From Pelomyxa schiedti (Eukaryota; Protista; Evosea), in contig JAHLWZ010000016.1 of NCBI GenBank assembly GCA_020536535.1, positions 1 through 64,000 of the forward strand: a stretch of DNA of 64,000 nucleotides, in the 5' to 3' direction. The translations under genes were made by a program, and so were the position numbers. The first letter of the stretch is position 1, and every line of letters starts with the position of its first letter. Positions 15,723 to 54,951 of the stretch are shown here, in pieces. The notes under the pieces were generated by a model that was not told the DNA's origin, made no database searches, and saw only the letters and a program-made list of their open reading frames with translations.

Positions 15723-16721
15723 TTACAAGCGGGTATTTAAGCTTCCTGCATTTAAGGCTCCATAGAGAAGGCCTTGTTGGTTTGTGGTCTGGCTATTTAG
15801 CATTGAGGGGTGGAAATTTGGGGGGCTTATTGAATGGGGCATAGAGGGTGGTTGTGTTTGCCAAGTTGGTTGTTGTGGATTGGGCTGTGTGAGTGTTGAG
15901 GGGTAGTTGCTGTTGTTACTTTGAGGCCAATTTGGCCTTGCTGCAGGAACATGAGATTGAAGGAGGGCGTTATCCTGAAGGTTTTTTTGGTAGTTGGGGT
16001 CAACTATGGAGAATGCAACTTGGGTTCGTATGTCAGATGCTATTTTTAGTGCATATTCTGGTGGTAAGTCCAAATCCACGGCCGTTTGTGTGGCGAAGAT
16101 ATCTACGTTCTTATAATCACAGGGAAAAAGTATCGTCAATCAGATTGGAATAAGGTAACAATCCACTTCATTATGCAATTATCCTTAAAGTTAAGGGAAG
16201 GAACCTGTACCAACATTTTATTTGGGTCCGAGATTATGTGGTTCTTCAAGTTCCATTTGATGAGTTCTTTTGACCCATCTGGTAGAGAAAGCTGAAAAGT
16301 GAAACCTTAGAGAAATCGGAAACAAATGGACATACTGCAATCTCCAGAGGAGTGTCCTCAGGAAAACGGTCCAGCAATTTGGTGAATTCCCCCAACTGCT
16401 TGGTAATTGCTTGTGCTATTGGCTTCTCAAACAAATTCAAAGGAAGAGAGGCATCCAAACAAGTTCTGTGTGCAAACATTTCGGTGGTAACATTTTTCTC
16501 TTCACGACCGATACAAAACAAGGCAAAAAAAAATGATAATAATAAAAAAATTAGCAACAGAAATGGGGAGTCAGTGACTAACCGAGAATGGTCCAGAAGA
16601 AGGAGTCACAGAAGTGAGTGGGTCCAACAATGATATCAACACAAATGGGAACCAACATATCCCACTCTTTGCTCGCTCTGCTGCCAATCACGCCCCCACC
16701 TGGTGGCGCCCCTGGCATCAT
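15723..16721 (-). CDS. SNF5/SMARCB1/INI1-family chromatin remodelling subunit
   Basis: LVPICVDIIVGPTHFCDSFFW...TTEMFAHRTCLDASLP...IAQAITKQL (repeat 1) and VDIFATQTAVDLDLPPEYALKIASDIRTQV (repeat 2). Confidence 0.85.
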
Positions 16722-16791
16722 TTTCCGATTTGATGGAAAACTGTTCCCCCCGAGGTGATTTGGCGGTTCGCAATTTATTCGACGAAACACA

Positions 16792-19383
16792 ATGTCATTG
16801 ACATCGACCGAGAGCGGGGAACCAACCGAGGTGGCGTTCAGGCCTGGCTCCAAGGTGTTTTCACTCAATCCCAAGTACAAAGATGGGACCAGATTGAGGG
16901 TATCGCCGCTGGACCAAGGCGACGGCAACTTTAACGGTGTTTGGCTGCCAAACGATGTCAAGTAGAACCCCGGCTCTGTTGTCAAATTATTACTAGATTT
17001 GTAGAGTTGACAAAAGAAATATATTATTTGTAAGATTACATACGTCCAGTAGACGATGACGAGCCAGGCTGATCTCCTCCTTTTTTTTTTTCTTTTTCCT
17101 CACAGAGTTTTGGTGCTGGAGGTAGAAAACGACTTTGTTCTGATTCAAAAGGACTCAGGGGAGAAAGGATGGATAAGATCTCGTAATCTGACGCACACTG
17201 GAAGAGTCTCTGGAGTAACAAAAGGAGTTCCTACAAATGAAGTCGTTACACCAGACCCAGAGTGCGTCTTCCTTGCTTGACGTTTTTAACGGCTTTCTGC
17301 AAGCTCTTACATAAAAAACCTAGATATGTGAAGGGAGTAAAGCTTTATAACATCGGAATCAAAGAAGATCCTGTAGCTGGTCAAAAGATGGGAAAAGGCG
17401 TCCAACATCTCATATCCTCTCAATGGATAAGTGCCATGAGTGAGTTTGTAGCGGCACATTTCAAGCAGCTACAAGCTTTCGTGGCCCATGCAAAACGGGC
17501 AACTGCCCTCTACCCAGGGTATGACTACCTGTATTTTACAAACACTGCAAATCAACTGTTCCATCGCGCTGATGCTGGTGGCCTGTGCTCTTCTGAATCA
17601 CTGGAGGATTTTTTAGCCGCCACATGGCTGGTCATGGCTGCGGCAGAGGTCGATGATTTTCCGTATAGCCGATACACACGTGAACAGCGTGCCGTTCAGC
17701 GTGAAGAATTTTATGCCTCATACTTATCTCCCAGAAATGGACCTGGCGTTTGCGTTATTGAGCGGGATGATGCTTGTACTTTGGGAAAATTTGCCATTCC
17801 ACTTGCCAGGCGTGACCTTCTCCCTCCTGTAGCAATGGAGCGCTTGGGCATAAATAACGAACTCAGTTCATTGAAGTATTCCGATCCCGAGGAACCCATG
17901 CGTGTTGGCTTCAAACTATCTGCCAGAATAGATTCTCTCAAGAGGCATTTTGAAGCTGTCCACAGGTATCTCTCCAGATAACCGTGCCTGTGTAATTTTC
18001 CACCAGACGAATGACTGATGAAGATCACATAACCCATCTTCTGTGGAATTTCCATGCTATTTACCATGTCCGTGTAGTATTCCCAGAAAAAAATGATCTG
18101 GTAAATTACACTGCCCTTGAAAAGGGACGCACAGGAGCACTTCACCGAGCGGCATACAATCCAACGACATCTCTGGATGCAATAAACTCCGGAAAAGTTC
18201 CTGCATCATCAGTACTGAAACTGGATTGGAACGAAGGCACCATTCCCCCCGCTCCCAGTGTCCGCTCTGCAATAGTTTCTTTTGTGCAAGCTGGAGATGG
18301 TGCCCAATTAAAGTGGTACCCACACCTTGCTGGTGGGGCTGCTTTACGAACCGCCTTAGCTGAGTACTGTGGAGTTATTGCTGAAAACATTATTGTTACC
18401 AATGGGTCTGACGATGCCCTCATTCTGCTGTGTTATTCTTATCTCGGTATAAACGCTTATCTATTTCACTTTCTCTAAGTCCTCACAGGATATGGGCAGA
18501 CAGCTTTGGCCCCAATTCCTACATATGAACACTTTTGCGTTAATGCCGTCAATAGCGGAGCCTCTTTAATCCGCGCTAATATCGGAGAGAATCCATTTGC
18601 AGCTAATCCGGAGGTACTGTGTAAAGCTATTGAGGAGCATCACCCCGTGGTTGTGTACTTGGTTTCTCCAAACAATCCGACCGGTGTCCACTGGACCCCC
18701 ACTGTTGTTAAAGGTCTGGCGACCAGATTCAGGTATGGCTTCGAAAATCCATACAAAGTACTAAGTCTTGCAGTCAGGTTGTTTTTATTGTAGATGAAGC
18801 ATACTACGAATTTGGTTCCATAGACCCTTCAACTGAAAAGCCATATACATGTGTGCAACTTGCTGCTAGCCTCACGAATGTAGTGGTAACCAGAACTTTC
18901 TCAAAGGCTTTCTGCCTTGCCTCTCTGCGATGCGGCTACCTTGTTGCTCACCCTAACGTGATTGAAACTCTGAGGGTCGGGTACAACCCAAAAAGTGTGA
19001 ACCAAATCGCACAAGTTGGCGCTCTGTGTGCTCTACGAGAATTCTCGTCCTACTACGCACCATATGTTGCTGCAACCAACAAAGCCAGAGAAGCCTTCCT
19101 TACATGTATGCGTTCAGTGGGAGTGGAGGCTTCCAATGGGGGAGGTGGAAACTTTGTGTGCATTCGCGTACCTGAAGGCACCAACACTCAAGACCTGTGC
19201 GCCAAATTGGAGCAGCAAGCTATCTTTGTTCGGGACATCAACGCCCGGTTCCCAGGATACATCAGAATCACCATTGGACTTGACATGAGCCGAGTTGAGG
19301 CTGCCATAATCGAGGCTCTTGGCCTCAAACCTACCACACCTCCCTCTATAACCACAACCACATCCAGCACAACACTCTTCTGA
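16792..19383 (+). CDS. Fusion protein: SH3b-like + 2x DUF5664-like (dATP/dGTP diphosphohydrolase-like) + histidinol-phosphate aminotransferase-like PLP domain
   Basis: In-frame GT-AG splicing (introns 16962-17105, 17262-17323, 17966-18006 and two more). HisC motifs LKLDWNE, TNGSDDAL, SPNNPTG, VDEAYYEF, RTFSKAFCLASLRCGY. DUF5664-like RRDLLPP...KY...SARIDSLKRHF...TDEDHITHLLWN. Confidence 0.85.
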
Positions 19384-19496
19384 GACAAAATCTCGTGAGA
19401 TCAAAGAATCGTTTGTTTTGAAAAGGAACTGTTTTTTTTCACCTTTCGCTTAAAAACCTCGAGGGAGTTAGTTCCCACGCCCCAGCACAAACCAAA

Positions 19497-21315
19497 ATGA
19501 CAGGGTTCCATCACCTTCACGACTATTTGGTGCTCCTTCAAGAACGCATTCCTGCCGCCGCTGTAACGGAGCCCGAGACGCCTGAGGCTCAGGATGAAAC
19601 CGCGGCGCAACAACAGCAACCGTGCAGCTGCGCGCAAGGGGAATACGCCAATTTGGGAGCTCTGATTAAGAAAGCGAAGGGAAACAGAGACCTGATGGAG
19701 GAATTGGAAGTGCTGAGGGAACTAGCAAAGGAGACAACAAGATTAAACCTTTTTGTTGGCAAACAGCTGGAACCAAGGCCCAGACCTTCGTCTTCATCAC
19801 CGGAAAATTTATGCTCATGTTTATGTGCTAGTTCAACTTGCTCAACCACTAGTACTCTGGGTACACCGACTTCGGCTTCAGAGGTGCCTGTGCCTGAGAG
19901 CACCAACTCTGAGAATTCTACGATACCTCCATTGCCGTCACTCACGAATGAGAATGCCATTACTGACTCTGCTGTGAAAAAGGCAAGGGCACTGGCTTCC
20001 ATGAGGGGACTGGCAATCGGCGATTCTCTTGGTTCTACATCCGAGTTTCAAGTGAGAACTGTATCCCCGTGTTTTGGAAATTGACCTCGAAAAGATTCCG
20101 TGGTTTGTAGGCAAGTTTACAGCCTTAAATTGGCCGGATGTAATGATAGGCACTGGTTCATGGACTTGCGGAGCTCCCACTGACGATACTGATATGGTTT
20201 GTCTCGAGGTATCTATCACAAAATTCACCTCTGAAGGCCATGGCCCTTCTGAGATCCTTTGGTGGAGTTGGAGACTGCACATTCAATGGCCCTGCAGCAG
20301 CCAAGAACTTCGTTACCTGGCTTTCTTCTGGTCCGGCGGATGTTGGGGCTACTACACGTTTTTCCTTGTCAAGTATCCTAATACCTCACTTTCTCCACCT
20401 TCTGACCGGGAATAGTATTAGAATCCACCAAGAATTTCGATAACTTTTCTTCTGGTGCTGCCAAGTATCATTCGGGAGGTCAGGCGAATGGAAGCCTAAT
20501 GAGGAATGGTGCCATCGCCGCAGGGATGGTAAGTTGCGGTTCCACTAGAGTGAAATATATGATATTGTTCTAGTATGCACGTTCAGAAGCTGAAATAGTG
20601 GAAGCTAGTGTTTTACATGGCATTATCACACATTATGGAGTTGAGGCCGTTCTCTGTTGTGTTATTCACTCCGTACTCATTCACCGAGCACTTAATTCCC
20701 GCCAAACGAGGCCTCCCACACTTGATGATATTAGGTGAGTTGACCTGGAAAATAAACCTCTCACTAACTCAACAGGGCTATACTTGCCGGTCCATGGACA
20801 GAATGGAAGAACTCAATAAGCAAGCACCCAGAAGGACTTGCTTGGTGTCATGCAATGGCTTCCACTCAGGCTGAAGTGGCCTTAATAAATTATTTAGCCG
20901 GCTTTGAGAATCTAGACCCATACCACGCTTACTACAAAGGTATCTTGCCTCACAGATAAAAATACATCAAGTGAACACAAATAATCAGGAATATCCGGGT
21001 ACTGTTCCCTCAGCCTAAAAATTGCTCTGTGGGCCTTGCATTGGAGTTTCAGTCACAGTCTCCCTTCATGCGGAATTCCCCACTGGCTACCACTGTGGCC
21101 CTTCCAACTGCACCACTTTGAGGTAGGTATTTCTCCACCACCCAAATACTAAAAAACTGCAGGTCATAAAATGGGTTGTGTTAATTGGTGCTGATGCAGA
21201 CACATATGGAGCAATTGCAGGCCCTCTTTTGGGTGCCTATCACCCAGAAACAATTCCCCAGTCCCTAATAGCACAATTGGAAGTGAACGAGGAACTACAA
21301 AAACTTTTTGCCTGA
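19497..21315 (+). CDS. ADP-ribosylglycohydrolase (ARH/DraG family)
   Basis: MRGLAIGDSLGSTSEF, PTDDTDM, DVGATT, ANGSLMR, IITH, GADADTYGAIAGPLLGAYH. Confidence 0.92.
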
Positions 21316-38927: not shown

Positions 38928-41697
38928 ATGGACATTGAAGTGGCGTGCAGGCATTGGAATTGTGGGTTGGACCCTTGGCCCGACGTGAAATCAATAAGGA
39001 GTAAATGGCCAACCAAATTTGTTTTCACTGTTGCTGCCACAATTCACTCAAAGTGGTGCTAACAATTTTTCCTTAGGGAGTTGTATGCAGTGTGGCAATA
39101 GGAGAGAAATTTGGTTGTGTGCCACCTGTTGGACTGTGAGTTGCTTGAGGTTAAGCACCCATGTTCTCTGGGAGTTTCAGTCACACTTACTTGTTCTCAA
39201 AAGGACTGATAAAGAGGGGCATGCTAAGGAGCACTTTCGTACAAGTAACCACTCTGTTGCGATTAGGATATCTGATTGCTGTTGTTCTGTTTGGTGTTTC
39301 TCATGCAATGCAACTGTTCAATCTCCGGAGCTGGATTTTTTCCTTCCTAAGTTGCAGAAACTGGAAGCTGGGAGGCAAACACCTCTCCCAGTTGTAGTCG
39401 AGGAAAAATTCCACGAATCCACCATCTGCAACTCAATGTAAGACAGCTTGTGTGGTAACTAAACTAATGTATCTAAGAACATTTCTGTTACAGATCAGAG
39501 CCCATCACGTTTCAAAACTGTCTCCAGTGTAACGTGACTGTGTGCAGTCCCGAGATTATTTCTATTCGATTTGAAAATTGCATTGAAAGCAAATTCAACG
39601 TTGTGAGTCAAGTGGACAATTCCGCACTTATTGTCAAAGCCTGTTCACGGTGTCATATTGAATCACATGCTTTAATATCCCAAATACATCTCGAGGTCGG
39701 CTTCACTATCTTTTATAGGAAAAAACCATCTAATTTCTCTCAGGACTGCTCTTACTTGAGTCTTTCACTTGAAGACCGTATTTGGAGTTCTGAATTCCAC
39801 AGGCACTGTGAAATACATGTTAAACGCTGCCACAAAATTAGAATTCTTCTTCACAGTGAATGGTTCATTCTTCCACTTGATGATCTACCTTCTCACTCGA
39901 CATTCTTACTTGAAGAAGGTCCTCGCTATCTCTACCCCAACTTCTCTTGACATTTTCTTTAAGGCCAGCTCTCCATTGTTGATTGTGCGGCGCACAGGCA
40001 TGCTGAGCCACCAGAGCTATCAGTTGAGAGCATTCCCCACTTTAAATCCTTTATTTAGTTGTCCCAGGTGATTCTCACAAACTACGGGCACAAGTTCATT
40101 TCTGAACTTACCAAGCATAAAGTTTTCACCTCTGGAGGAGTGCAGATCCCCCAAAGCAAATTTCTATCAGGAAGGAGTCAATCACTGTTGACAAAAGTTT
40201 TTCGTAGGGCAAAGACATCATACCTACTCTCTGACCAAGACAGAAGTGAATATGACCAGCTCGTCCAAATGGGAATGATAAGCCTTGTGCACACAAATGC
40301 AATGAGTGTGGATGATATCCGCCTGTTATACAGGCGCAACCCTCTCGAAAACATATCCGGAGTCATCTTTGAATACACCAGTAAATGCGGGTTTCGTTGT
40401 CACCACTGCTACAACAGCAGAGTGGAACCTGTGACAGAACAAAACGTTGATGCCTTGAAGCGAGTTGTGGAGGCACTTATCCCATTGGGGGTCAATACTT
40501 TTTCCTTCATTGGGGGTGAAGTATCCCAGTTTGGAGATGGATGGCTTGATCTGGTGCGTTACATAAAGTCCTTTGAGGACACAAAAGATACTTCCGATAA
40601 GGCTCTCTCCGTGTCTATAACTACAAGTGGTTGGTTTCTTGGAAAGACGAACTTCATTGCCGCCGGGCAAAGATACAACAATGTAACCGACTTCCTGGGT
40701 CATTTACATGACTGCGGTGTGGACTACATACGATTCAGCTTGGATGGACCTGATGCAGCAGCTCATGACACCAATAGGTATACAGTGTTCAAGATATAAA
40801 CACCTTCTGAGAATAAAAATCAGGCAGCACCCAGGTCTGTTCAATCAAATTATCAACAGCTTCGCAGTCGTGAAGGAGGCAGGCCTGAATCCTCGGGTGT
40901 CTGTTCTTGTTCCTCCTGAAGGTCAAACTCCCAAATTCTTGGAGTTCCTGGAACGCCTCTCTGACTTGATTTACACTTTCCCACCCGAAACGCCTGGCTT
41001 CATCAAGGTGGCTAGACTTTCCGCGGATACCTTCAACACCTTGAGCAATTTCATTGACATTGGCTCAGCCGCCAACAGAGCCCAAGCCTCTCCTCCAACT
41101 GACAAAACAACAGCAACACCAACCACACCAACCACACCAAAATCCACCTGCACCTCTGAGACTGAGACCAATCCATCAGATACAAATGCTGATGGCACAA
41201 CAGAAGCATCATCATCAAACAAATCGGAACCCCTCACAATATCAGAGCTGATGGAAAATGACCTGTACTGCAAAGGATACTTCCGGCCCAGCCCCTACAT
41301 CACCATCAAAGCCAACGGAATGCTCTCACTTTGCCGGATCACGACTGCCGGCGAAGGCTACGGCAACATCCACGACAACCGCAGCGGAACCGGCAGCACC
41401 GCCCCGGCAATTGTGGGACTGCTCAATGGGCTTCACCACAGCTTCACGTTCCGGCTTCACGCGGAACACCAGGTCAACTCGTACCTCCCCTACATGGAAC
41501 CTTCCCTGTTTGGCACGGAATTCACGCACCCGTGCGCGGCCCGTGCGATTCTGACCATGATCGCCAGAATGATGCACGAGCACGGCGTGAGTGCCGCAGA
41601 CGCCGAGGAGATTGCACACATCAACCGGCGAGTGGCGTGGCTCACGGGGCACGCGCCAAGCCCAATTCCACCCTCAGAATCTGCTATTTCTTGGTAG
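38928..41697 (+). CDS. zf-UBP zinc finger + radical SAM (PqqE/SPASM-twitch-like) protein
   Basis: CMQCGNRREIWLCATCWTVSCLR.DKEGHAKEHF...HSVAI...VWCFSC; YTSKCGFRCHHCY (40386-40409), FIGGE, ITTSG, FSLDG...HDTNR, C...ITIKANGMLSLC...YGNI. Exons can be joined in frame by GT-AG introns. Confidence 0.75.
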
Positions 41698-49960: not shown

Positions 49961-52900
49961 ATGAATCTGGTGGTAGGGTGCGGAGAGCCGTTGTACCACG
50001 GGGCAAGTGCTGCCTCCCCGAAATCAATTGTGGGTGTTGGCTCACCTATGCTCTCGCCCATTGCCGTGTCCATGTCGGTAGTCATCAAGGGTTTCCTCTG
50101 CGAAACAACAATCACCTCAGAATTTGTCCCACTTTCGAGTTTAAGTCAAGCCACCTCCTGGGATCCAACAGCAAAAACATCACCAAACACAACAACATTG
50201 AGAACTGCGAATGGAGATGGGACTGCAACTGCAAATGCAATTGGAGATGGAATTAAAATTGGGACTGGGGAAGAAGATGCAGCAGAGGGTGTTGTTATGA
50301 TGAACTTACCAAGGCGTGGGACTGTGTGTGGTTTCTCGTTGGATGTTGGTGGTGGCACTTTTTTGGATGCTGTTCCAGTAGAGAAGGTTTGTATTGACTG
50401 GACTAATTTTAGGTGTTGAGGACTTTTTTCTTTTTTTTTTTTTTTTGACAGGATAGAGCAAGGGTATCTTTTGAGTCAGAGTTGAGAGCAAAGTCACAAC
50501 AAACGCAAGGTGTGGCAGAACATGTTAGGGGAAACGTTTTCCGCATGAGAATCAGTCCTATTCCACGTGACAGACCTTTCATTGTTAAGGTTGTCAGATT
50601 CAGGGGAATCAGGGAAGAATGTTCTCACATTCTATTTTCACAAGGTCGTCATTGCTTCGGAATTGGAAGAAGGGAACGAAAGAGACACTTTCAACTTCCC
50701 ATTTGATACACATACTCCCTGTCAGTCGTTTTACTTGAAAGTCGTCCTACTTACTATTGTTTTCAGCACTTATTAGAACAGGTTTGCACCGATGTGGACT
50801 CCAAATTCTATTTACAACCTCTTGTGGAACCAACTATGGCAACACTACTCCACGGAGACATGACATTCAAGCTCATTACAACCGAGAGTTGGTCTTCTTT
50901 CTTCAATGCCTTTGCAGCTCATCCATACAAGATTCAATCACCCGATACGAAGCAATGGTTATAGCGAACAATATCCAACTACCTCGGCTCTTTTCAATTG
51001 ATTTCCCGAGAGCAATGCAGCAAAGTACAGCTGTTGTGGGAGGGTCAAGCTCCCAGGAAGAGGAATCAAGTTTCTTCTGCGTGAAAATTCAAATGCCTTT
51101 TTCTTCCTGTGTAAGGCCAAAGGTACAACCGGTGATCAATCCATATCATCGACAACTACTACAGGCATCCAGTGTTGGGATCATATGGGATAAATCTCTG
51201 AGCAGACAATATTTCACTCAAATAAGGTCAGTACCCTCTCATGCCATTTTTTTACAGCTCCCTAGATCACTCGAGCTTCTGAGAGAGATATTCCGTTACG
51301 AAAGAAATGTCACCAAGTGGCTGCTGCACTTCCTTGACACGACAGTGCATTCTCCAATTATTGTGACAGTAACTTCAACTACAGTTTAACACATGGGACT
51401 CACCCTGTTGCAGGACAGCAGTGATTTAGAAAAAAAAATTTCGAATGCAGTGTTCGAAGGTGCCACAAATTTGGCCTCCATCCAAAATATCTCCCCAGTT
51501 ATCTGCGACTATTACGTTCTGTTTTCAGATGGGTTTTCCACCTGGGGTGAAACAGTACTTTTCTTAATTTCAGTATGTTCAAGTTGACCCTTTCCAAGAA
51601 CTGGTCTTGTGCCAGCTTTTCCAAGCCAATATTCACTGTAACTTGTGAGACACAATCAGACCATAATATGTTGGAGAAGATTGCCCAGTCTACCGGAGGG
51701 GTCTTCTTTGATTTTACTGGCAGCAAAACATATCTGTCTGCTAAGTCAATCCTTTCCTAGAACTAACAACCTCAAAGGGAATTCTTGCCCCTTATTCGAA
51801 ATGTACAGTACCGATTTGTTGGGTGCCAATACAACACAAACCAAATAGTCGATGTTATTCCTGAGGAGCCATCTTCTTTCAGCAAGTCTTTTGTCATTGC
51901 AGGACAACTGCCAATGCACAGAGATGCTGGTTTAACCCTTTCTTAATTTGGATGTGTTCAACGCGCGGTAGTGTCTATTAAAATCGATATCTTGGACCCG
52001 ACAACCCAAAGTGTGATATCGAAAGAGGCCATTTTACTCCCAACTCAAGATAGAAGTGGAATTGGTGTGTATTCCAAATGAAGGGTACTGCAGTTCATTT
52101 CCACAAGTTTCAAGATTTTGGGCCACAAAAAAGGCACACTGTCTTTTACTTCACAGTGCCTCTGCCAGTACAGAGACAGACATAGTTGCACTCGCAAGAA
52201 AATACCAGTCAATCCTTCTCGCCATCCCATAAGATAACCCACTTATAGTTTTGTCTCTTCCACTGTTTCACTTCTTCTGCTCACAACATTGGACCAAGTA
52301 GTCCTTCAAGGTTTCATCCTATTTCACAAAATGGAATAGTTTTTGAGATATAATGTCGAACCTCCTGCCCAGTACACGCAGTTACGTGCACAATTTCATT
52401 TGAAGATTGCACAACAGCAAGTGAAGAGAGTCTTGGGTTCACTCACGTTTTTACAACTCCTAGGCTCTAAATCTAAAAAAATCCGAATTGAAATTTGCCA
52501 ATACTTTAAACATGTGGAAGCGCAAACACCAACTGTGGTGGACTAAAGCATACAATACTTTGACGCCTGTATCTCGCTACACTGCACAGTTATCTTCTAA
52601 GAATAACAATAGCAACCAATCTGGCGTAGTTTCTTGAAGTATGAGTATACAGAAGATCAGTGGGGAGACCCCCAACTTTCCTGTTTCCCTGAAGTTCTGA
52701 AAATCAATGAGGACACCGAGGGAGCACAGCTCGCATCCTGCAATGCTAATGGTCTTGTATTGCAGGGGGCTAACCGGCAACCTTCCTTTCTTAGTTTTCT
52801 CCGACACCATTCCAGTGTGCAAAAGCTGCGCTTCCAGGAACCAGCACATTTTGTACATCGATCACACATAGGCTGGGACCCTGAGCCCGAACACCACATT

Positions 52901-54951
52901 TCAAATAATGAGGATGATAACGAGGAAGTCAATGATGAGGGTACTCAATCCTGGGCTAATCTTGAAACCGATGAAGCAGAGGGCAGCGATATGGCACAGT
53001 CTGGTGCAGATTTTGAATTGTGCTCCTCAGATAGAATATTTCCTGAAGGAGATTCCCTGGGTACTTATGAAGAGGAAAGAGGTGATGAACTTGTGCAGCT
53101 TGAGCCTGGAGGAGAACCATTTGGCTGTGAAGACAGTGAAATAGGTACAACTCCAGAAGTCTCTATTGCCTCAAGTGATTTTCCTGTGCTCGAAAATGTA
53201 TGAGAAACCGCATGTCCAAGTTCAAATATCGAAAATAGGCTCCCATTTGGGCGGCTGACTCTGCTTCTCCAAGTTGTACTATTTGCTTCAAAAACTTTAG
53301 CATCATGCACCGAGTAAGCTCATAATGCCACATATTAAAGATATCTAACTATGAATGTAGAGACATCACTGCAGAGCTTGTGGTCTTTTTTCCCGTTGTA
53401 TTCCAACTTGATTTTACCCATTCTCAACAGGTTGTTTGGTATGTACTGCATGCACAGCTCGGACAACAGGGGAACGCATTTGCCTTAACTGCATACCCAA
53501 GCAAGCCGAAAAACATATACCACCACTTGCTTTCTCTGTAGATCTTTCTTCTCAACCCACAACCCTTGGCGTCTCTAACTGTGATCAAACTTACTTGAAA
53601 CTTTTACAAGTGCATAAACTTTTTATATAAGCTGTGTACTTAGGTGACCAATAGGAACAAAAACCAGTTGTTGCACCTATCTTTTTTGTAAATGCCGCTC
53701 TGTCCGTTGTAAAAGATCAACAATTAGCAGTAAGGTGTTCCAACTTACTGTACTAATGCCTTTAATATCTAACTTTTGTAAGGATAATAAGTAACCTTGC
53801 CGACATTGAGCTTGATAATTCATGTCTACTACGTGTTAGTGCGGCTATTTGTGAACAAATAGGAGATATTAAGTGCCTCGCCCAATATCACTCTTCTTCT
53901 TACAAATTCTAGTTGTGCTGTTCACCTTTACGAAAGGGCGATGACACTTAGATCAGAAGAACCCCAGGTACATGGATCGTGTAAATGTTATTTACCCCGA
54001 GAAGACATATCGTGATCTTGCATTGGCACTATGCCAGCTTAAGCCGATTTGTAGTGGTATGTTTTATTTGCACTTTCACCCCTTAATGCATTGAAGAAAA
54101 CTTGGGAAGGGCGCTACGCCTCTTGAATACTATTTTGGAGAAAGGTGAAGTCTCCTTTACATCAATGTACTCAACCACTGATATCAATCGACAGAATGGG
54201 ACACAAGGTTTTCTGGAATTGAGGCCGTTATCTTTATGGTTGACCTACTGGCAAGTATCATTTTCCAAACATAAAATACAGGATCTCAACGCCATTTGGA
54301 TGCAAGTTTTACAAAACCAGTATGAGATTCCCATTTATTTGCTCTTCTCTAAAATTCATAGCATGGAGGCTACGGTGTCCCATTCAGTTTTCCCGCAGTT
54401 CCTCTGGGAACCTATGGATGTTGACATAAGAATTGTATTGACCTGGTGAGGCTTATCCCTACTGACTAGAACTCAAAATATTAGGGATTGTGATAACACC
54501 AACGTGGTATTTTTCTTTAGTGATACACAACTGAGTTTACAAGTGACACCTAAAGGAATTGTTGGTTGAAGAACCGAGTGGTGAGCGGTGCTATTGCTTT
54601 AACAATCAAACCAAATCAGGAGGTCCCTCAGTATTCCCTCTTATAGAATCCAACACACTTGCAGGAATACTCAGCCGAGACTCCAGTTGTTACGGACCAG
54701 TGGAGTATGCATGCCGCCAAGCACTGCCCGGGTCATACAAGATTTCTTCCAAACTTTTTCACACTCCACTTCCGTGTGTCCCACATCCGATATTATCTTG
54801 CTCACTTTTTATCCAAAGGGGCAAACAAGTAGTCGCCACTGTCCACCTCTATGTCGATTTTGCTCGCCCCAAACAACAGTTGTGGGTTACATCGTGTGTT
54901 TTATCGCAACCCGGCAAAGAATTCCTTATGGCCACTCTATCACACTTCTAA
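49961..54951 (+). CDS. VIT + vWA-like + FYVE + TPR + DUF2135(YfaP)-like protein
   Basis: VIT: EG..MNLP..GTVCGFSLDV...DAVPVEK.RARVSFE...GNVFRMRISPIP. vWA-like: IIWDKSLSR, FEGATN, LFSDG. FYVE: WAAD..CTIC..RRHHCRACG..VCTAC..RICLNC. C-terminus: [29 protein letters not shown]...YGPVEY...ALPGSYKI. Confidence 0.85.

What the first reader, a model, noticed from the sequence alone, without database searches (positions are those of the whole stretch)
16792..19383. SH3b - tandem phage-type DUF5664 nucleotide diphosphohydrolase - HisC-type aminotransferase fusion in a eukaryote
Seen: one spliced ORF joins (i) GTRLRVSP...WLPNDVKVLVLEVENDFVLIQKDSGEKGWIRSRNL, (ii) RRDLLPPVAMERLG...LKYS...GFKLSARIDSLKRHFEAVHRRMTDEDHITHLLWNFHAIYH...PEKNDL (17808-18100), and (iii) a complete PLP aminotransferase (Schiff-base Lys codon 18904, in TFSKA). 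Known: (i) fits the bacterial SH3b pattern; (ii) fits the mostly phage-encoded DUF5664 / dATP-dGTP diphosphohydrolase family (R.DLLP, KY, DS..RH, DEDH...WN); (iii) belongs to the HisC/CobC-CobD group. Inference: a laterally acquired, intron-colonised multi-enzyme coupling NTP pyrophosphohydrolysis to transamination. It could be a non-orthologous HisE-like step fused to HisC (HisE is also an all-alpha NTP-PPase) or an undescribed modified-nucleotide or amino-nucleotide pathway. I know of no described protein with this architecture.
Basis: partly seen in the sequence, partly recalled or inferred. Interest (0 to 1): 0.9.

Follow-up and report, generated by a model that had tools for sequence, protein, structure and literature searches.

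The report
Amoeba gene fusing nucleotide hydrolase and aminotransferase
An expressed, intron-containing gene of the amoeba Pelomyxa schiedti joins a bacterial SH3-like domain, a distant relative of a phage dNTP-splitting enzyme and a HisC-type aminotransferase; the same fusion occurs in Myxococcota bacteria and other protists, it is not for making histidine, and its substrate is unknown.

Summary
The window is Pelomyxa schiedti. The locus is a six-exon gene (16792-19383, +) whose 753-aa product is identical to a deposited NCBI protein named only "histidinol-phosphate transaminase". RNA contigs show four of the five introns removed, including the decisive 17966-18006 junction.

- **SH3b-like domain:** weak in this protein, at the Pfam cut-off in an orthologue.
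- **DUF5664/PF18909 domain:** one divergent copy is supported by profile, tblastn, shared motifs and fold search against phage models.
- **HisC-family aminotransferase:** complete, with all PLP and phosphate-binding residues, but below the hisC equivalog cut-off.

"Tandem DUF5664" is not shown: the 140 residues before the DUF5664 part form a family-specific helical subdomain with no significant likeness to it. The HisE-HisC idea is contradicted, because this genome and a bacterial carrier lack IGPD, HisA/F and HisI.

The fusion is conserved in Myxococcota MAGs, Balamuthia, a prokinetoplastid and uncultured eukaryotes. Trees place the bacterial forms basally, which suggests bacterium-to-eukaryote transfer. 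Context ties the hydrolase-like module to purine genes in Chlamydiales. It ties the nearest stand-alone aminotransferases to CDP-alcohol gene clusters in Myxococcota.

Best reading: a bifunctional enzyme acting on a phosphorylated, probably nucleotide-linked, amine. It is a new architecture of known families and is uncharacterised.

The parts
16792..16961 (+). Exon 1: start codon and first half of the SH3b-like domain (residues 1-57 plus two bases of codon 58)
   Evidence: ORF and sequence; identical to P0112 residues 1-56. The junction is supported by gap-free alignment with intronless orthologues. There is no RNA contig here.
16962..17105 (+). Intron 1 (144 nt, GT..AG), splitting the SH3b-like domain
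   Evidence: Read and needed to bypass the TAG at 16963-16965. It agrees with the deposited protein P0112. It is not covered by RNA contigs.
17106..17261 (+). Exon 2: second half of the SH3b-like domain and the conserved linker (R..GVTKGV..E.VTPDPEYV)
   Evidence: Pfam SH3_3 E 5.8e-4 on the exon. The linker is invariant in 15 orthologues. RNA contig X2 joins 17261 to 17324.
17262..17323 (+). Intron 2 (62 nt, GT..AG)
   Evidence: Skipped in RNA contig X2 record 3.
17324..17965 (+). Exon 3: family-specific helical N-half (about 17325-17747) and the first two thirds of the DUF5664-like C-half (from about 17790)
   Evidence: phmmer finds 103 relatives covering the whole 213 aa as one unit. Pfam dGTP_diPhyd_N hits residues 155-212 of the exon. 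AlphaFold2 of the orthologous double domain gives pLDDT 91, all-alpha.
17966..18006 (+). Intron 3 (41 nt, GT..AG), inside the DUF5664-like domain; it contains the in-frame stop at 17979-17981
   Evidence: Skipped in RNA contig X1 record 1, which has 185 and 157 bases on either side.
18007..18446 (+). Exon 4: end of the DUF5664-like domain (DEDH...WN...PEKNDL, to about 18103), the linker, and the start of the aminotransferase (from about 18194)
   Evidence: Translation; motif alignment with phage DUF5664 proteins; Aminotran_1_2 and hisC hits.
18447..18488 (+). Intron 4 (42 nt, GT..AG)
   Evidence: Skipped in RNA contigs of X1 and X2.
18489..18732 (+). Exon 5: middle of the aminotransferase (PTYEHF, SPNNPTG)
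   Evidence: Y110 and N157 equivalents are invariant against E. coli HisC.
18733..18773 (+). Intron 5 (41 nt, GT..AG)
   Evidence: Skipped in RNA contigs of X1, X2 and X3.
18774..19383 (+). Exon 6: C-terminal half of the aminotransferase (DEAY, Schiff-base Lys codon 18904-18906, two phosphate-binding Arg) and stop TGA at 19381-19383
   Evidence: hisC 121 bits on the exon; 100% identical to P0112 552-753; invariant D184, Y187, K214, R222, R322 and R335 equivalents. RNA contigs end at 19380-19386.

Best explanation
This is a real, transcribed, six-exon nuclear gene of Pelomyxa schiedti. It encodes a 753-aa protein with no signal peptide, so probably cytosolic, in three parts. Part 1 is an SH3b-like beta domain joined by a tightly conserved linker. 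Part 2 is a roughly 250-residue all-alpha module: its C-terminal 90-100 residues are a divergent member of the phage DUF5664/PF18909 dNTP pyrophosphohydrolase family, and its N-terminal 140 residues are a helical subdomain found only in this protist/Chlamydiales/Myxococcota branch. Part 3 is a HisC-family, PLP-dependent aminotransferase that keeps the Schiff-base lysine, the PLP ligands and both arginines that hold a substrate phosphate in HisC. The whole architecture pre-exists in Myxococcota and was most likely transferred to eukaryotes, where it gained introns. The following is inferred, not shown. The protein does not serve histidine synthesis. The all-alpha module binds a nucleoside triphosphate or nucleoside-diphospho compound and cleaves it at the alpha-beta bond. 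The aminotransferase acts on a phosphorylated amine/keto partner of the same pathway, such as a phospho-amino-alcohol or phosphorylated nucleoside intermediate.
For: Gene and expression. Organism: the assembly size of 52,367,397 bases in 5337 contigs matches PMC8887013, and P0112 is named Pelomyxa schiedti. Eukaryotic setting: an SNF5-like gene lies upstream and GC content matches the rest of the window. DUF5664 homology. Enzymatic activity of phage DUF5664 (dATP/dGTP/dUTP to dNMP plus PPi): PMC12884076. Motif residues R-x-D-L-L-P, N-E-L, K-Y, D-S-x-x-R-H, D-E-D-H and W-N are retained here and nearly invariant in 15 fused orthologues. Aminotransferase active site: Y55, D85, Y110, N157, D184, Y187, S213, K214, R222, R322 and R335 (E. 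coli HisC numbering) are invariant. No histidine pathway. Conserved architecture: Myxococcota MAGs with sigma-54, TetR, ABC and DsrE neighbours; Balamuthia, Apiculatamorpha and eukaryotic environmental contigs. Trees: fused forms plus myxobacterial stand-alone aminotransferases form one clade (SH-aLRT 97). All known eukaryotic forms fall in one clade (91/84) with bacterial forms outside it. Nucleotide link: in Chlamydiales MAGs the stand-alone double domain lies 14 bp after purB and near purA, or overlaps a PNP_UDP_1 gene. Phospho-alcohol/nucleotide link for the aminotransferase clade: stand-alone relatives at 56-60% identity sit among IPCT/DIPPS-like cytidylyltransferase and CDP-alcohol transferase genes.
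Against: No activity was measured, and no substrate can be named. The window's own protein scores below the Pfam cut-offs for PF18909 and SH3_3. One eukaryotic subclade (P0121-P0124) has replaced the Asp of R-x-D-L-L-P and the Glu of N-E-L, so hydrolysis may not be essential to the fusion. The fused genes have no conserved bacterial neighbourhood. P. schiedti shows no IPCT/DIPPS-like gene. Stand-alone chlamydial forms carry signal peptides, so their setting may differ from the cytosolic fusion. The direction of transfer rests on modest support (80-91) and on roots that use only the aminotransferase part. The stand-alone outgroup may itself derive from a fused ancestor.
Confidence: 0.55

Rival explanations
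1. The two enzymes are fused but have no shared pathway. The DUF5664-like module is a house-cleaning or pool-balancing (d)NTP pyrophosphohydrolase. The HisC-like domain is a general aminotransferase (aromatic amino acids, or histidinol phosphate taken up from prey) used in amino-acid catabolism.
For: HisC-family enzymes with broad aromatic specificity are established knowledge, not tested here. Phage DUF5664 alone is a dNTPase. The double domain also occurs alone and fused to unrelated partners, Peptidase_M23 and EF-hand. This shows that it is a portable module.
Against: The fusion and its linker are conserved nearly residue for residue across Myxococcota and at least two eukaryotic supergroups, which argues for functional coupling. 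Both phosphate-binding Arg and Tyr110 are kept; from memory of the E. coli HisC structure papers, broad-specificity relatives replace Tyr110 by Phe.
Confidence: 0.22
2. The DUF5664-like module is a non-catalytic nucleotide sensor or scaffold that regulates or localises the aminotransferase, with the SH3b-like domain as a binding module.
For: The P0121-P0124 subclade lost two acidic motif residues yet keeps the whole architecture. The N-half has no recognisable catalytic family.
Against: Most orthologues, including the window's, keep every motif shared with active phage enzymes. The purine-gene context in Chlamydiales fits an enzyme.
Confidence: 0.13
3. One reading: a non-orthologous HisE-like pyrophosphohydrolase fused to HisC, serving histidine biosynthesis.
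For: HisE is an all-alpha NTP pyrophosphohydrolase (established knowledge). hisC is the best-scoring NCBIfam model.
Against: The P. schiedti genome has no IGPD, Histidinol_dh, PRA-PH, PRA-CH or His_biosynth. The bacterial carrier G001 has no IGPD, His_biosynth or PRA-CH. The hisC score is below the equivalog cut-off.
Confidence: 0.03
4. An artefact: bacterial contamination or a chimeric gene model.
For: All domains are of bacterial or phage type. The assembly comes from single amplified cells that carry bacterial symbionts.
Against: Five spliceosomal GT..AG introns, four of them seen removed in RNA contigs. Eukaryotic neighbours on a 290-kb scaffold. The same architecture occurs independently in many genomes.
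Confidence: 0.02

Closest known systems
Phage DUF5664 / PF18909 (dGTP_diPhyd_N) dNTP pyrophosphohydrolases, such as the Arthrobacter phage Wayne DUF5664 and the DUF5664-DUF550 enzyme of Acinetobacter phage SH-Ab 15497
   Same: The C-half shares the motifs R-x-D-L-L-P, H/N-x-E, K-Y, D-S-x-x-R-H, D-E-D-H and W-N. tblastn gives E 2e-7. Phage DUF5664 models are the top structural matches.
   Different: It is preceded by a roughly 140-residue helical subdomain absent from the phage proteins aligned. It scores below the Pfam cut-off in this protein. It sits in a cellular, mostly eukaryotic/Chlamydiales/Myxococcota branch and is fused to SH3b and an aminotransferase. Its activity is untested.
HisC, histidinol-phosphate aminotransferase (TIGR01141), and its relatives CobD/CobC
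   Same: Same fold-type I family. All PLP-binding and phosphate-binding residues of E. coli HisC are invariant. hisC is the best model at 218 bits.
   Different: It scores below the equivalog cut-off of 276.55. The host lacks the rest of the histidine pathway. It has an extra conserved N-terminal arm (Y-x-P-T-T-S-L) and forms its own clade together with myxobacterial enzymes encoded in CDP-alcohol gene clusters.
All-alpha NTP pyrophosphohydrolase superfamily (MazG, HisE, dimeric dUTPases)
   Same: All-alpha predicted fold. Weak structural matches to dimeric dUTPases: 1w2y Z 5.3 with 125 aligned, 5myd Z 5.2 with 124 aligned, 2yay Z 4.6. The MazG-like 2p06 matches both halves (Z 4.4 and 5.0).
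   Different: The Z scores lie within the noise for helical bundles, so superfamily membership beyond the DUF5664 link is not established.
Bacterial SH3b domains (PF08239/PF06347)
   Same: A profile match at the gathering threshold in orthologue P0002, and sub-threshold matches in the window's protein and other orthologues.
   Different: There is no signal peptide and no cell-wall hydrolase partner in this protein. A peptidoglycan-binding role is unlikely in the cytosol.

Membership tests
PF18909 dGTP_diPhyd_N (DUF5664) | Profile score at or above Pfam's gathering cut-off (27 bits) | tested here: inconclusive
   The window's protein P0112 scores 20.3 bits, E 5.5e-4. Orthologues P0002 and P0114 score 28.2 and 28.6. 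Stand-alone relatives P0006 and P0014 score 34 and 39.1.
PF18909 dGTP_diPhyd_N (DUF5664) | Conserved sequence motifs shared with phage members | tested here: met
   Alignment A3 with four phage proteins shows R, D and P of R-x-D-L-L-P, G, R-H and the D of the DEDH region as nearly invariant. tblastn gives E 2e-7.
PF18909 dGTP_diPhyd_N (DUF5664) | Fold like that of phage members | tested here: met
   Foldseek against BFVD: most of the top-ranked hits are dATP/dGTP diphosphohydrolase N-terminal domain proteins, probability 0.94-1.0, best E 1.9e-3. The model has pLDDT 91.
PF18909 dGTP_diPhyd_N (DUF5664) | dNTP to dNMP plus PPi activity | not testable with these tools
   Shown only for phage enzymes (PMC12884076).
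Tandem (duplicated) DUF5664 | A second recognisable DUF5664 copy in residues 110-250 | tested here: not met
   No Pfam or PHROG hit. hhalign of N-half against C-half gives E 0.11, probability 0.5%. The N-half model finds DUF5664/MazZ models only at ranks 34 and 36, E 1.9, probability 0.12-0.14. Against PDB, Z is at most 6.5 with generic helical matches.
HisC equivalog (TIGR01141) | Score at or above the curated cut-off of 276.55 bits | tested here: not met
   218.2 bits for P0112 and 217.4 for P0002.
HisC equivalog (TIGR01141) | Schiff-base Lys, PLP ligands and the phosphate-binding Arg pair | tested here: met
   Y55, N157, D184, Y187, S213, K214, R222, R322 and R335 are invariant against E. 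coli HisC. The residue roles are from my memory of the E. coli HisC structure papers.
HisC equivalog (TIGR01141) | Operates within a histidine biosynthesis pathway | tested here: not met
   No IGPD, Histidinol_dh, PRA-PH, PRA-CH or His_biosynth in G000; controls were positive in 14 of 14 genomes. The assembly is about 82% BUSCO-complete.
PF00155 Aminotran_1_2 | Profile score above the cut-off over the full domain | tested here: met
   134.6 bits, profile positions 4-358 of 361.
SH3b (PF08239 SH3_3) | Profile score at or above 27 bits | tested here: inconclusive
   P0112 scores 18.8 bits (E 1.8e-3), P0002 27.2 bits, and P0114 23.4 bits plus SH3_4 at 22.2.
All-alpha NTP-PPase superfamily (MazG / dimeric dUTPase) | Significant structural similarity to solved members | tested here: inconclusive
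   1w2y Z 5.3, 5myd Z 5.2, 2yay Z 4.6 and 2p06 Z 4.4-5.0. Foldseek against PDB finds nothing at E <= 0.001.

The most novel reading that the evidence does not exclude
The fusion defines an undescribed two-step route. A single-chain, pseudo-dimeric DUF5664-type enzyme acts on a nucleotide-linked phospho-amine, either hydrolysing an NDP-amino-alcohol or nucleotide precursor or running the reverse nucleotidyl transfer. A HisC-like enzyme then interconverts the phosphorylated amine and keto forms. On this reading it is a metabolic module invented in Myxococcota and spread by lateral transfer to bacterivorous protists (Amoebozoa, prokinetoplastids).
Probability: 0.25. Interest if true: 0.75.

Novelty: new variant of a known kind. 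Interest (0 to 1): 0.55.

Why it matters
A protein family known only from phage nucleotide-pool manipulation turns out to have a cellular branch in protists, Chlamydiales and Myxococcota. In that branch it carries an extra subdomain, and in the fused members it is permanently joined to a phosphate-ester aminotransferase. Databases label the product "histidinol-phosphate transaminase" in organisms that cannot make histidine, so that annotation is misleading. The conserved fusion gives a concrete, expressible target for finding a new nucleotide-linked amine reaction. It is also a clean case of a multi-domain bacterial gene gaining introns after transfer to eukaryotes.

Tried and rejected
- **Spliced product.** Exons were searched one by one by reference. 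The full-length product was taken from database entry P0112, which search for homologous proteins returned and which is identical to the exons.
- **PHROGs on the exons:** no hit.
- **PDB by sequence.** With exon 3, the only hit was a chance-level match to the N-terminus of uracil-DNA glycosylase (E 1.3). With the family profile, there was only a low-complexity-like hit at E 0.14.
- **Foldseek against PDB** with the double-domain model: nothing at E <= 0.001.
- **ESM Atlas** by features and by shape: nothing usable.
- **Tandem duplication test.** The N-half folded alone finds no DUF5664 match.
A six-sequence alignment worked but used only two peptide patterns, so the three bacterial loci it found are a lower bound.
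- **Pathway partners.** No IPCT/DIPPS-like gene was seen in P. schiedti. The fused genes in Myxococcota share no conserved neighbourhood.
- **Histidine pathway reading:** rejected on gene absence.
- **Literature.** DUF5664 and PF18909 occur only in phage papers. There is no paper on the eukaryotic fusion, and the P. schiedti genome paper does not mention histidine.
Full report
**1. What is in the sequence**

Reading 16000-20200 against the six-frame ORF list gives one plus-strand gene of six exons:
- 16792-16961
- 17106-17261
- 17324-17965
- 18007-18446
- 18489-18732
- 18774-19383 (TGA at 19381-19383)

The introns are 144, 62, 41, 42 and 41 nt, all GT..AG. The CDS is 2262 nt, giving 753 aa.

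They were searched one at a time by reference. A later homology search returned a public protein, P0112. It is 753 aa, named "histidinol-phosphate transaminase [Pelomyxa schiedti]", and lies on a 290,924-bp contig. Its sequence is 100% identical to the exon translations at the expected positions:
- exon 3 matches residues 110-322
- exon 6 matches residues 552-753
- all junction residues fit

The assembly holding the window has 52,367,397 bases in 5337 contigs. That matches the published P. schiedti single-cell assembly, "52.4 Mb ... 5337 scaffolds" (PMC8887013). The upstream neighbour on the minus strand is an SNF5/SMARCB1-like gene in pieces. GC content is uniform across the window. The gene therefore sits in a eukaryotic chromosome.

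**2. Is it one transcript?**

Public single-cell RNA-seq runs labelled "protist metagenome" hold the locus. Their contigs, laid on 16500-19700, skip four stretches:
- 17262-17323
- 17966-18006
- 18447-18488
- 18733-18773

The contig that matters most covers 17778-17962 and continues at 18004-18160. The stop at 17979-17981 is therefore intronic, and the DUF5664-like domain is read through into the exon that also starts the aminotransferase.

Intron 1 and the stretches 17526-17777 and 18161-18322 have no RNA contig. The last two lie inside single exons. Intron 1 is supported by the deposited model and by a gap-free alignment with intronless orthologues. Contigs cannot show transcript ends, so a long-read cDNA would still be worthwhile.

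**3. The three parts**

Pfam scores on the complete protein P0112:

| Family | Bits | E-value | Residues | Cut-off |
|---|---|---|---|---|
| Aminotran_1_2 | 134.6 | 6.1e-39 | 393-729 | 19.7 |
| dGTP_diPhyd_N (PF18909, formerly DUF5664) | 20.3 | 5.5e-4 | 265-344 | 27 |
| SH3_3 | 18.8 | 1.8e-3 | 52-85 | 27 |

The two weak calls are real homology, because relatives pass:
- P0002, a 724-aa orthologue, scores 28.2 for PF18909 and 27.2 for SH3_3.
- P0114 scores 28.6 for PF18909.
- Stand-alone relatives P0006 and P0014 score 34 and 39.1.

Further support for the DUF5664 link:
- The C-half of the family finds phage DUF5664 genes by tblastn (E 2e-7, 37% identity; 117 phage records).
- An alignment with four phage proteins shows the shared motifs R-x-D-L-L-P, H/N-x-E, K-Y, D-S-x-x-R-H, D-E-D-H and W-N.
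- An AlphaFold2 model of the orthologous 256-residue module is confident (pLDDT 91, pTM 0.88, all-alpha).
- Against predicted viral structures, most of the top hits are "dATP/dGTP diphosphohydrolase N-terminal domain" proteins (probability about 1, best E 1.9e-3).

Phage DUF5664 has measured activity. The Arthrobacter phage Wayne protein converts dATP, dGTP and dUTP to dNMP (PMC12884076).

**4. "Tandem" is not shown**

A phmmer scan of 1.84 billion representatives with exon 3 found 103 relatives. In them the whole 213 residues behave as one unit. The first 140 residues have no Pfam or PHROG hit.

- Profile-profile comparison of the N-half with the C-half gives E 0.11 and probability 0.5%.
- Folded alone (pLDDT 85), the N-half finds no DUF5664 model above noise.
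- Against PDB it finds only generic helical bundles, with Z at most 6.5.
- The whole module gives weak matches to dimeric dUTPases (1w2y Z 5.3, 5myd Z 5.2, 2yay Z 4.6). The MazG-like 2p06 aligns to either half (Z 4.4 and 5.0).

This is compatible with a single-chain pseudo-dimer of the all-alpha NTP-pyrophosphohydrolase type, but it lies within helical-bundle noise. I therefore describe the module as one DUF5664-like domain plus a family-specific helical subdomain.

**5. The aminotransferase**

NCBIfam ranks hisC (TIGR01141) first at 218.2 bits, below its cut-off of 276.55. CobD and other HisC-family models follow.

Aligned with E. coli HisC, the fused proteins and their nearest stand-alone relatives keep Y55, D85, Y110, N157, D184, Y187, S213, K214, R222, R322 and R335 without exception. 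From my memory of the E. coli HisC structures, the last two arginines hold the substrate phosphate. A phosphorylated substrate is therefore likely.

**6. Not histidine biosynthesis**

Six-frame searches of the P. schiedti assembly find none of the following:
- IGPD
- Histidinol_dh
- PRA-PH
- PRA-CH
- His_biosynth

Every control genome was positive. The only substantial hisC-like match in the genome is this gene.

The bacterial carrier G001 also lacks IGPD, His_biosynth and PRA-CH. It does have a Histidinol_dh-family gene and a weak PRA-PH hit. The assembly is about 82% BUSCO-complete, so absence is strong but not absolute. The HisE-HisC reading is rejected.

**7. Relatives and origin**

Carriers of the same three-part architecture:

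| Carrier | Evidence |
|---|---|
| Myxococcota MAGs, uninterrupted ORF (P0110 Kofleriaceae; P0002 in a 7.2-Mb "uncultured bacterium" MAG; P0109) | Neighbours include a sigma-54 activator, TetR, ABC transporter, DsrE/DsrC and monomeric IDH |
| Balamuthia mandrillaris | Annotated "DUF5664 domain-containing protein" |
| Apiculatamorpha spiralis, a prokinetoplastid | EukProt entry |
| Environmental contigs | Eukaryotic neighbours (START, PH, oxysterol-binding, IBR) |

None of the fused proteins has a signal peptide. SH3b, linker, both halves and motifs are highly conserved across 15 of them.

One long-branched eukaryotic subclade (P0121-P0124) has replaced the Asp of R-x-D-L-L-P and the Glu of N-E-L.

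The double domain also occurs in other settings:
- alone in the amoebae Paradermamoeba and Luapelamoeba
- fused to EF-hands in the dinoflagellate Polykrikos, and to Peptidase_M23 in an unnamed environmental protein (P0014)
- with signal peptides in two Chlamydiales MAGs

Trees:
- An aminotransferase tree rooted on distant HisC-like proteins joins fused forms and myxobacterial stand-alone enzymes (SH-aLRT 97). The bacterial fused forms P0002 and P0109 branch first, with weak inner support.
- A full-length tree puts all known eukaryotic forms in one clade (91/84), with bacterial forms outside it.

Together with the gain of five introns, this fits one bacterium-to-eukaryote transfer followed by spread or loss. 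The support is modest, and composition is heterogeneous across the rows. The stand-alone "outgroup" may also derive from a fused ancestor: its N-terminus still aligns with the tail of the DUF5664-like domain.

**8. Clues to function**

- **Purine context.** In one Chlamydiales MAG the double-domain gene starts 14 bp after purB (427 bits) and lies near purA (555 bits). In another it overlaps a PNP_UDP_1-family gene. This fits a nucleotide hydrolase.
- **CDP-alcohol context.** The closest stand-alone aminotransferases (56-60% identity, 400-428 aa) lie in a conserved myxobacterial cluster beside the riboflavin operon. The cluster has two NTP_transferase genes, up to five CDP-alcohol phosphatidyltransferase genes (three or more in every locus read) and two Polysacc_synt genes, and the best named models are IPCT/DIPPS and PIP synthase. 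This machinery activates phosphorylated alcohols with CTP.

The aminotransferase clade therefore probably makes or uses a phosphorylated amino-alcohol-type compound that meets nucleotides. The fused protein brings a nucleotide alpha-beta-cleaving module to the same polypeptide. I infer a coupled reaction on a nucleotide-linked or nucleotide-derived phospho-amine. The substrate is unknown.

P. schiedti shows no IPCT/DIPPS-like gene, and the fused genes have no conserved neighbours. The fused protein therefore appears self-contained.

**9. Verdict**

- **Observation:** confirmed, except for "tandem".
- **Interpretation:** partly supported. It is an intron-bearing, transcribed fusion, and acquisition from bacteria is the most likely origin. 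Histidine link: no. Undescribed nucleotide-amine chemistry: possible.
- **Novelty:** the protein and its orthologues are already in public databases under generic or misleading names. No paper in the searchable library treats the fusion. It is a new architecture of known families, with one subdomain of unknown affinity.
- **Interest:** moderate to good, 0.55.

Noticed in passing
window 15723-16557 (- strand): The upstream neighbour is a split SNF5/SMARCB1-like chromatin-remodelling gene (Pfam SNF5 at 21.9 and 16.3 bits in two ORF pieces). It is divergently oriented from the fusion gene, with about 200 bp between them.
   Followed up: partly
L006:4451-10179 and L007:5911-7496 (Chlamydiales MAGs): The stand-alone double-domain gene carries a signal peptide. 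It lies 14 bp downstream of purB and near purA in one MAG, and overlaps a PNP_UDP_1 phosphorylase-family gene in the other. An exported NTP-hydrolase-like protein in purine-gene context is unexplained.
   Followed up: partly
L021-L025 (Myxococcota contigs), gene at 8001-9239/9287: The closest stand-alone aminotransferases sit in a conserved cluster next to the riboflavin operon. The cluster has two IPCT-like nucleotidyltransferases, three to five CDP-alcohol phosphatidyltransferases and two Polysacc_synt flippase-like genes, and looks like an undescribed CDP-alcohol pathway.
   Followed up: partly
P0141:12-29 vs P0112:343-360: The N-terminus of the stand-alone myxobacterial aminotransferases still aligns with the last helix and tail of the DUF5664-like domain (H-V-x-V-V-x-P-E-x-N-D-L-V). 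This suggests they arose by truncation of a fused ancestor.
   Followed up: partly
P0121-P0124 (environmental eukaryotic contigs L030, L031): A long-branched subclade of the fusion has replaced the Asp of R-x-D-L-L-P and the Glu of N-E-L. In two contigs it lies next to a START-domain gene. The hydrolase activity may have been lost there.
   Followed up: no
P0014 and P0019: The double domain is also fused to a Peptidase_M23 domain (environmental protein) and to EF-hands (the dinoflagellate Polykrikos kofoidii), so it is a mobile module with varied partners.
   Followed up: no
G001:C27:59082-60233: The bacterial MAG carrying the fusion has a Histidinol_dh-family gene (214 bits) but no IGPD, HisA/F or HisI. 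It is either a HisD paralogue with another role or the result of an incomplete MAG.
   Followed up: no
window 17436-17537 (exon 3 residues 38-71): A chance-level resemblance (E 1.3) to the N-terminal helix region of family-1 uracil-DNA glycosylase (1okb). The UDG catalytic motifs do not follow, so I treat it as coincidence.
   Followed up: partly
window 38928-41697 and 49961-54951: Earlier first-reader notes flag two more bacterial-type domain fusions on this same window: zf-UBP with radical SAM, and VIT-vWA-TPR-DUF2135 with FYVE. I did not examine them. The scaffold may be rich in laterally acquired fusions.
   Followed up: no
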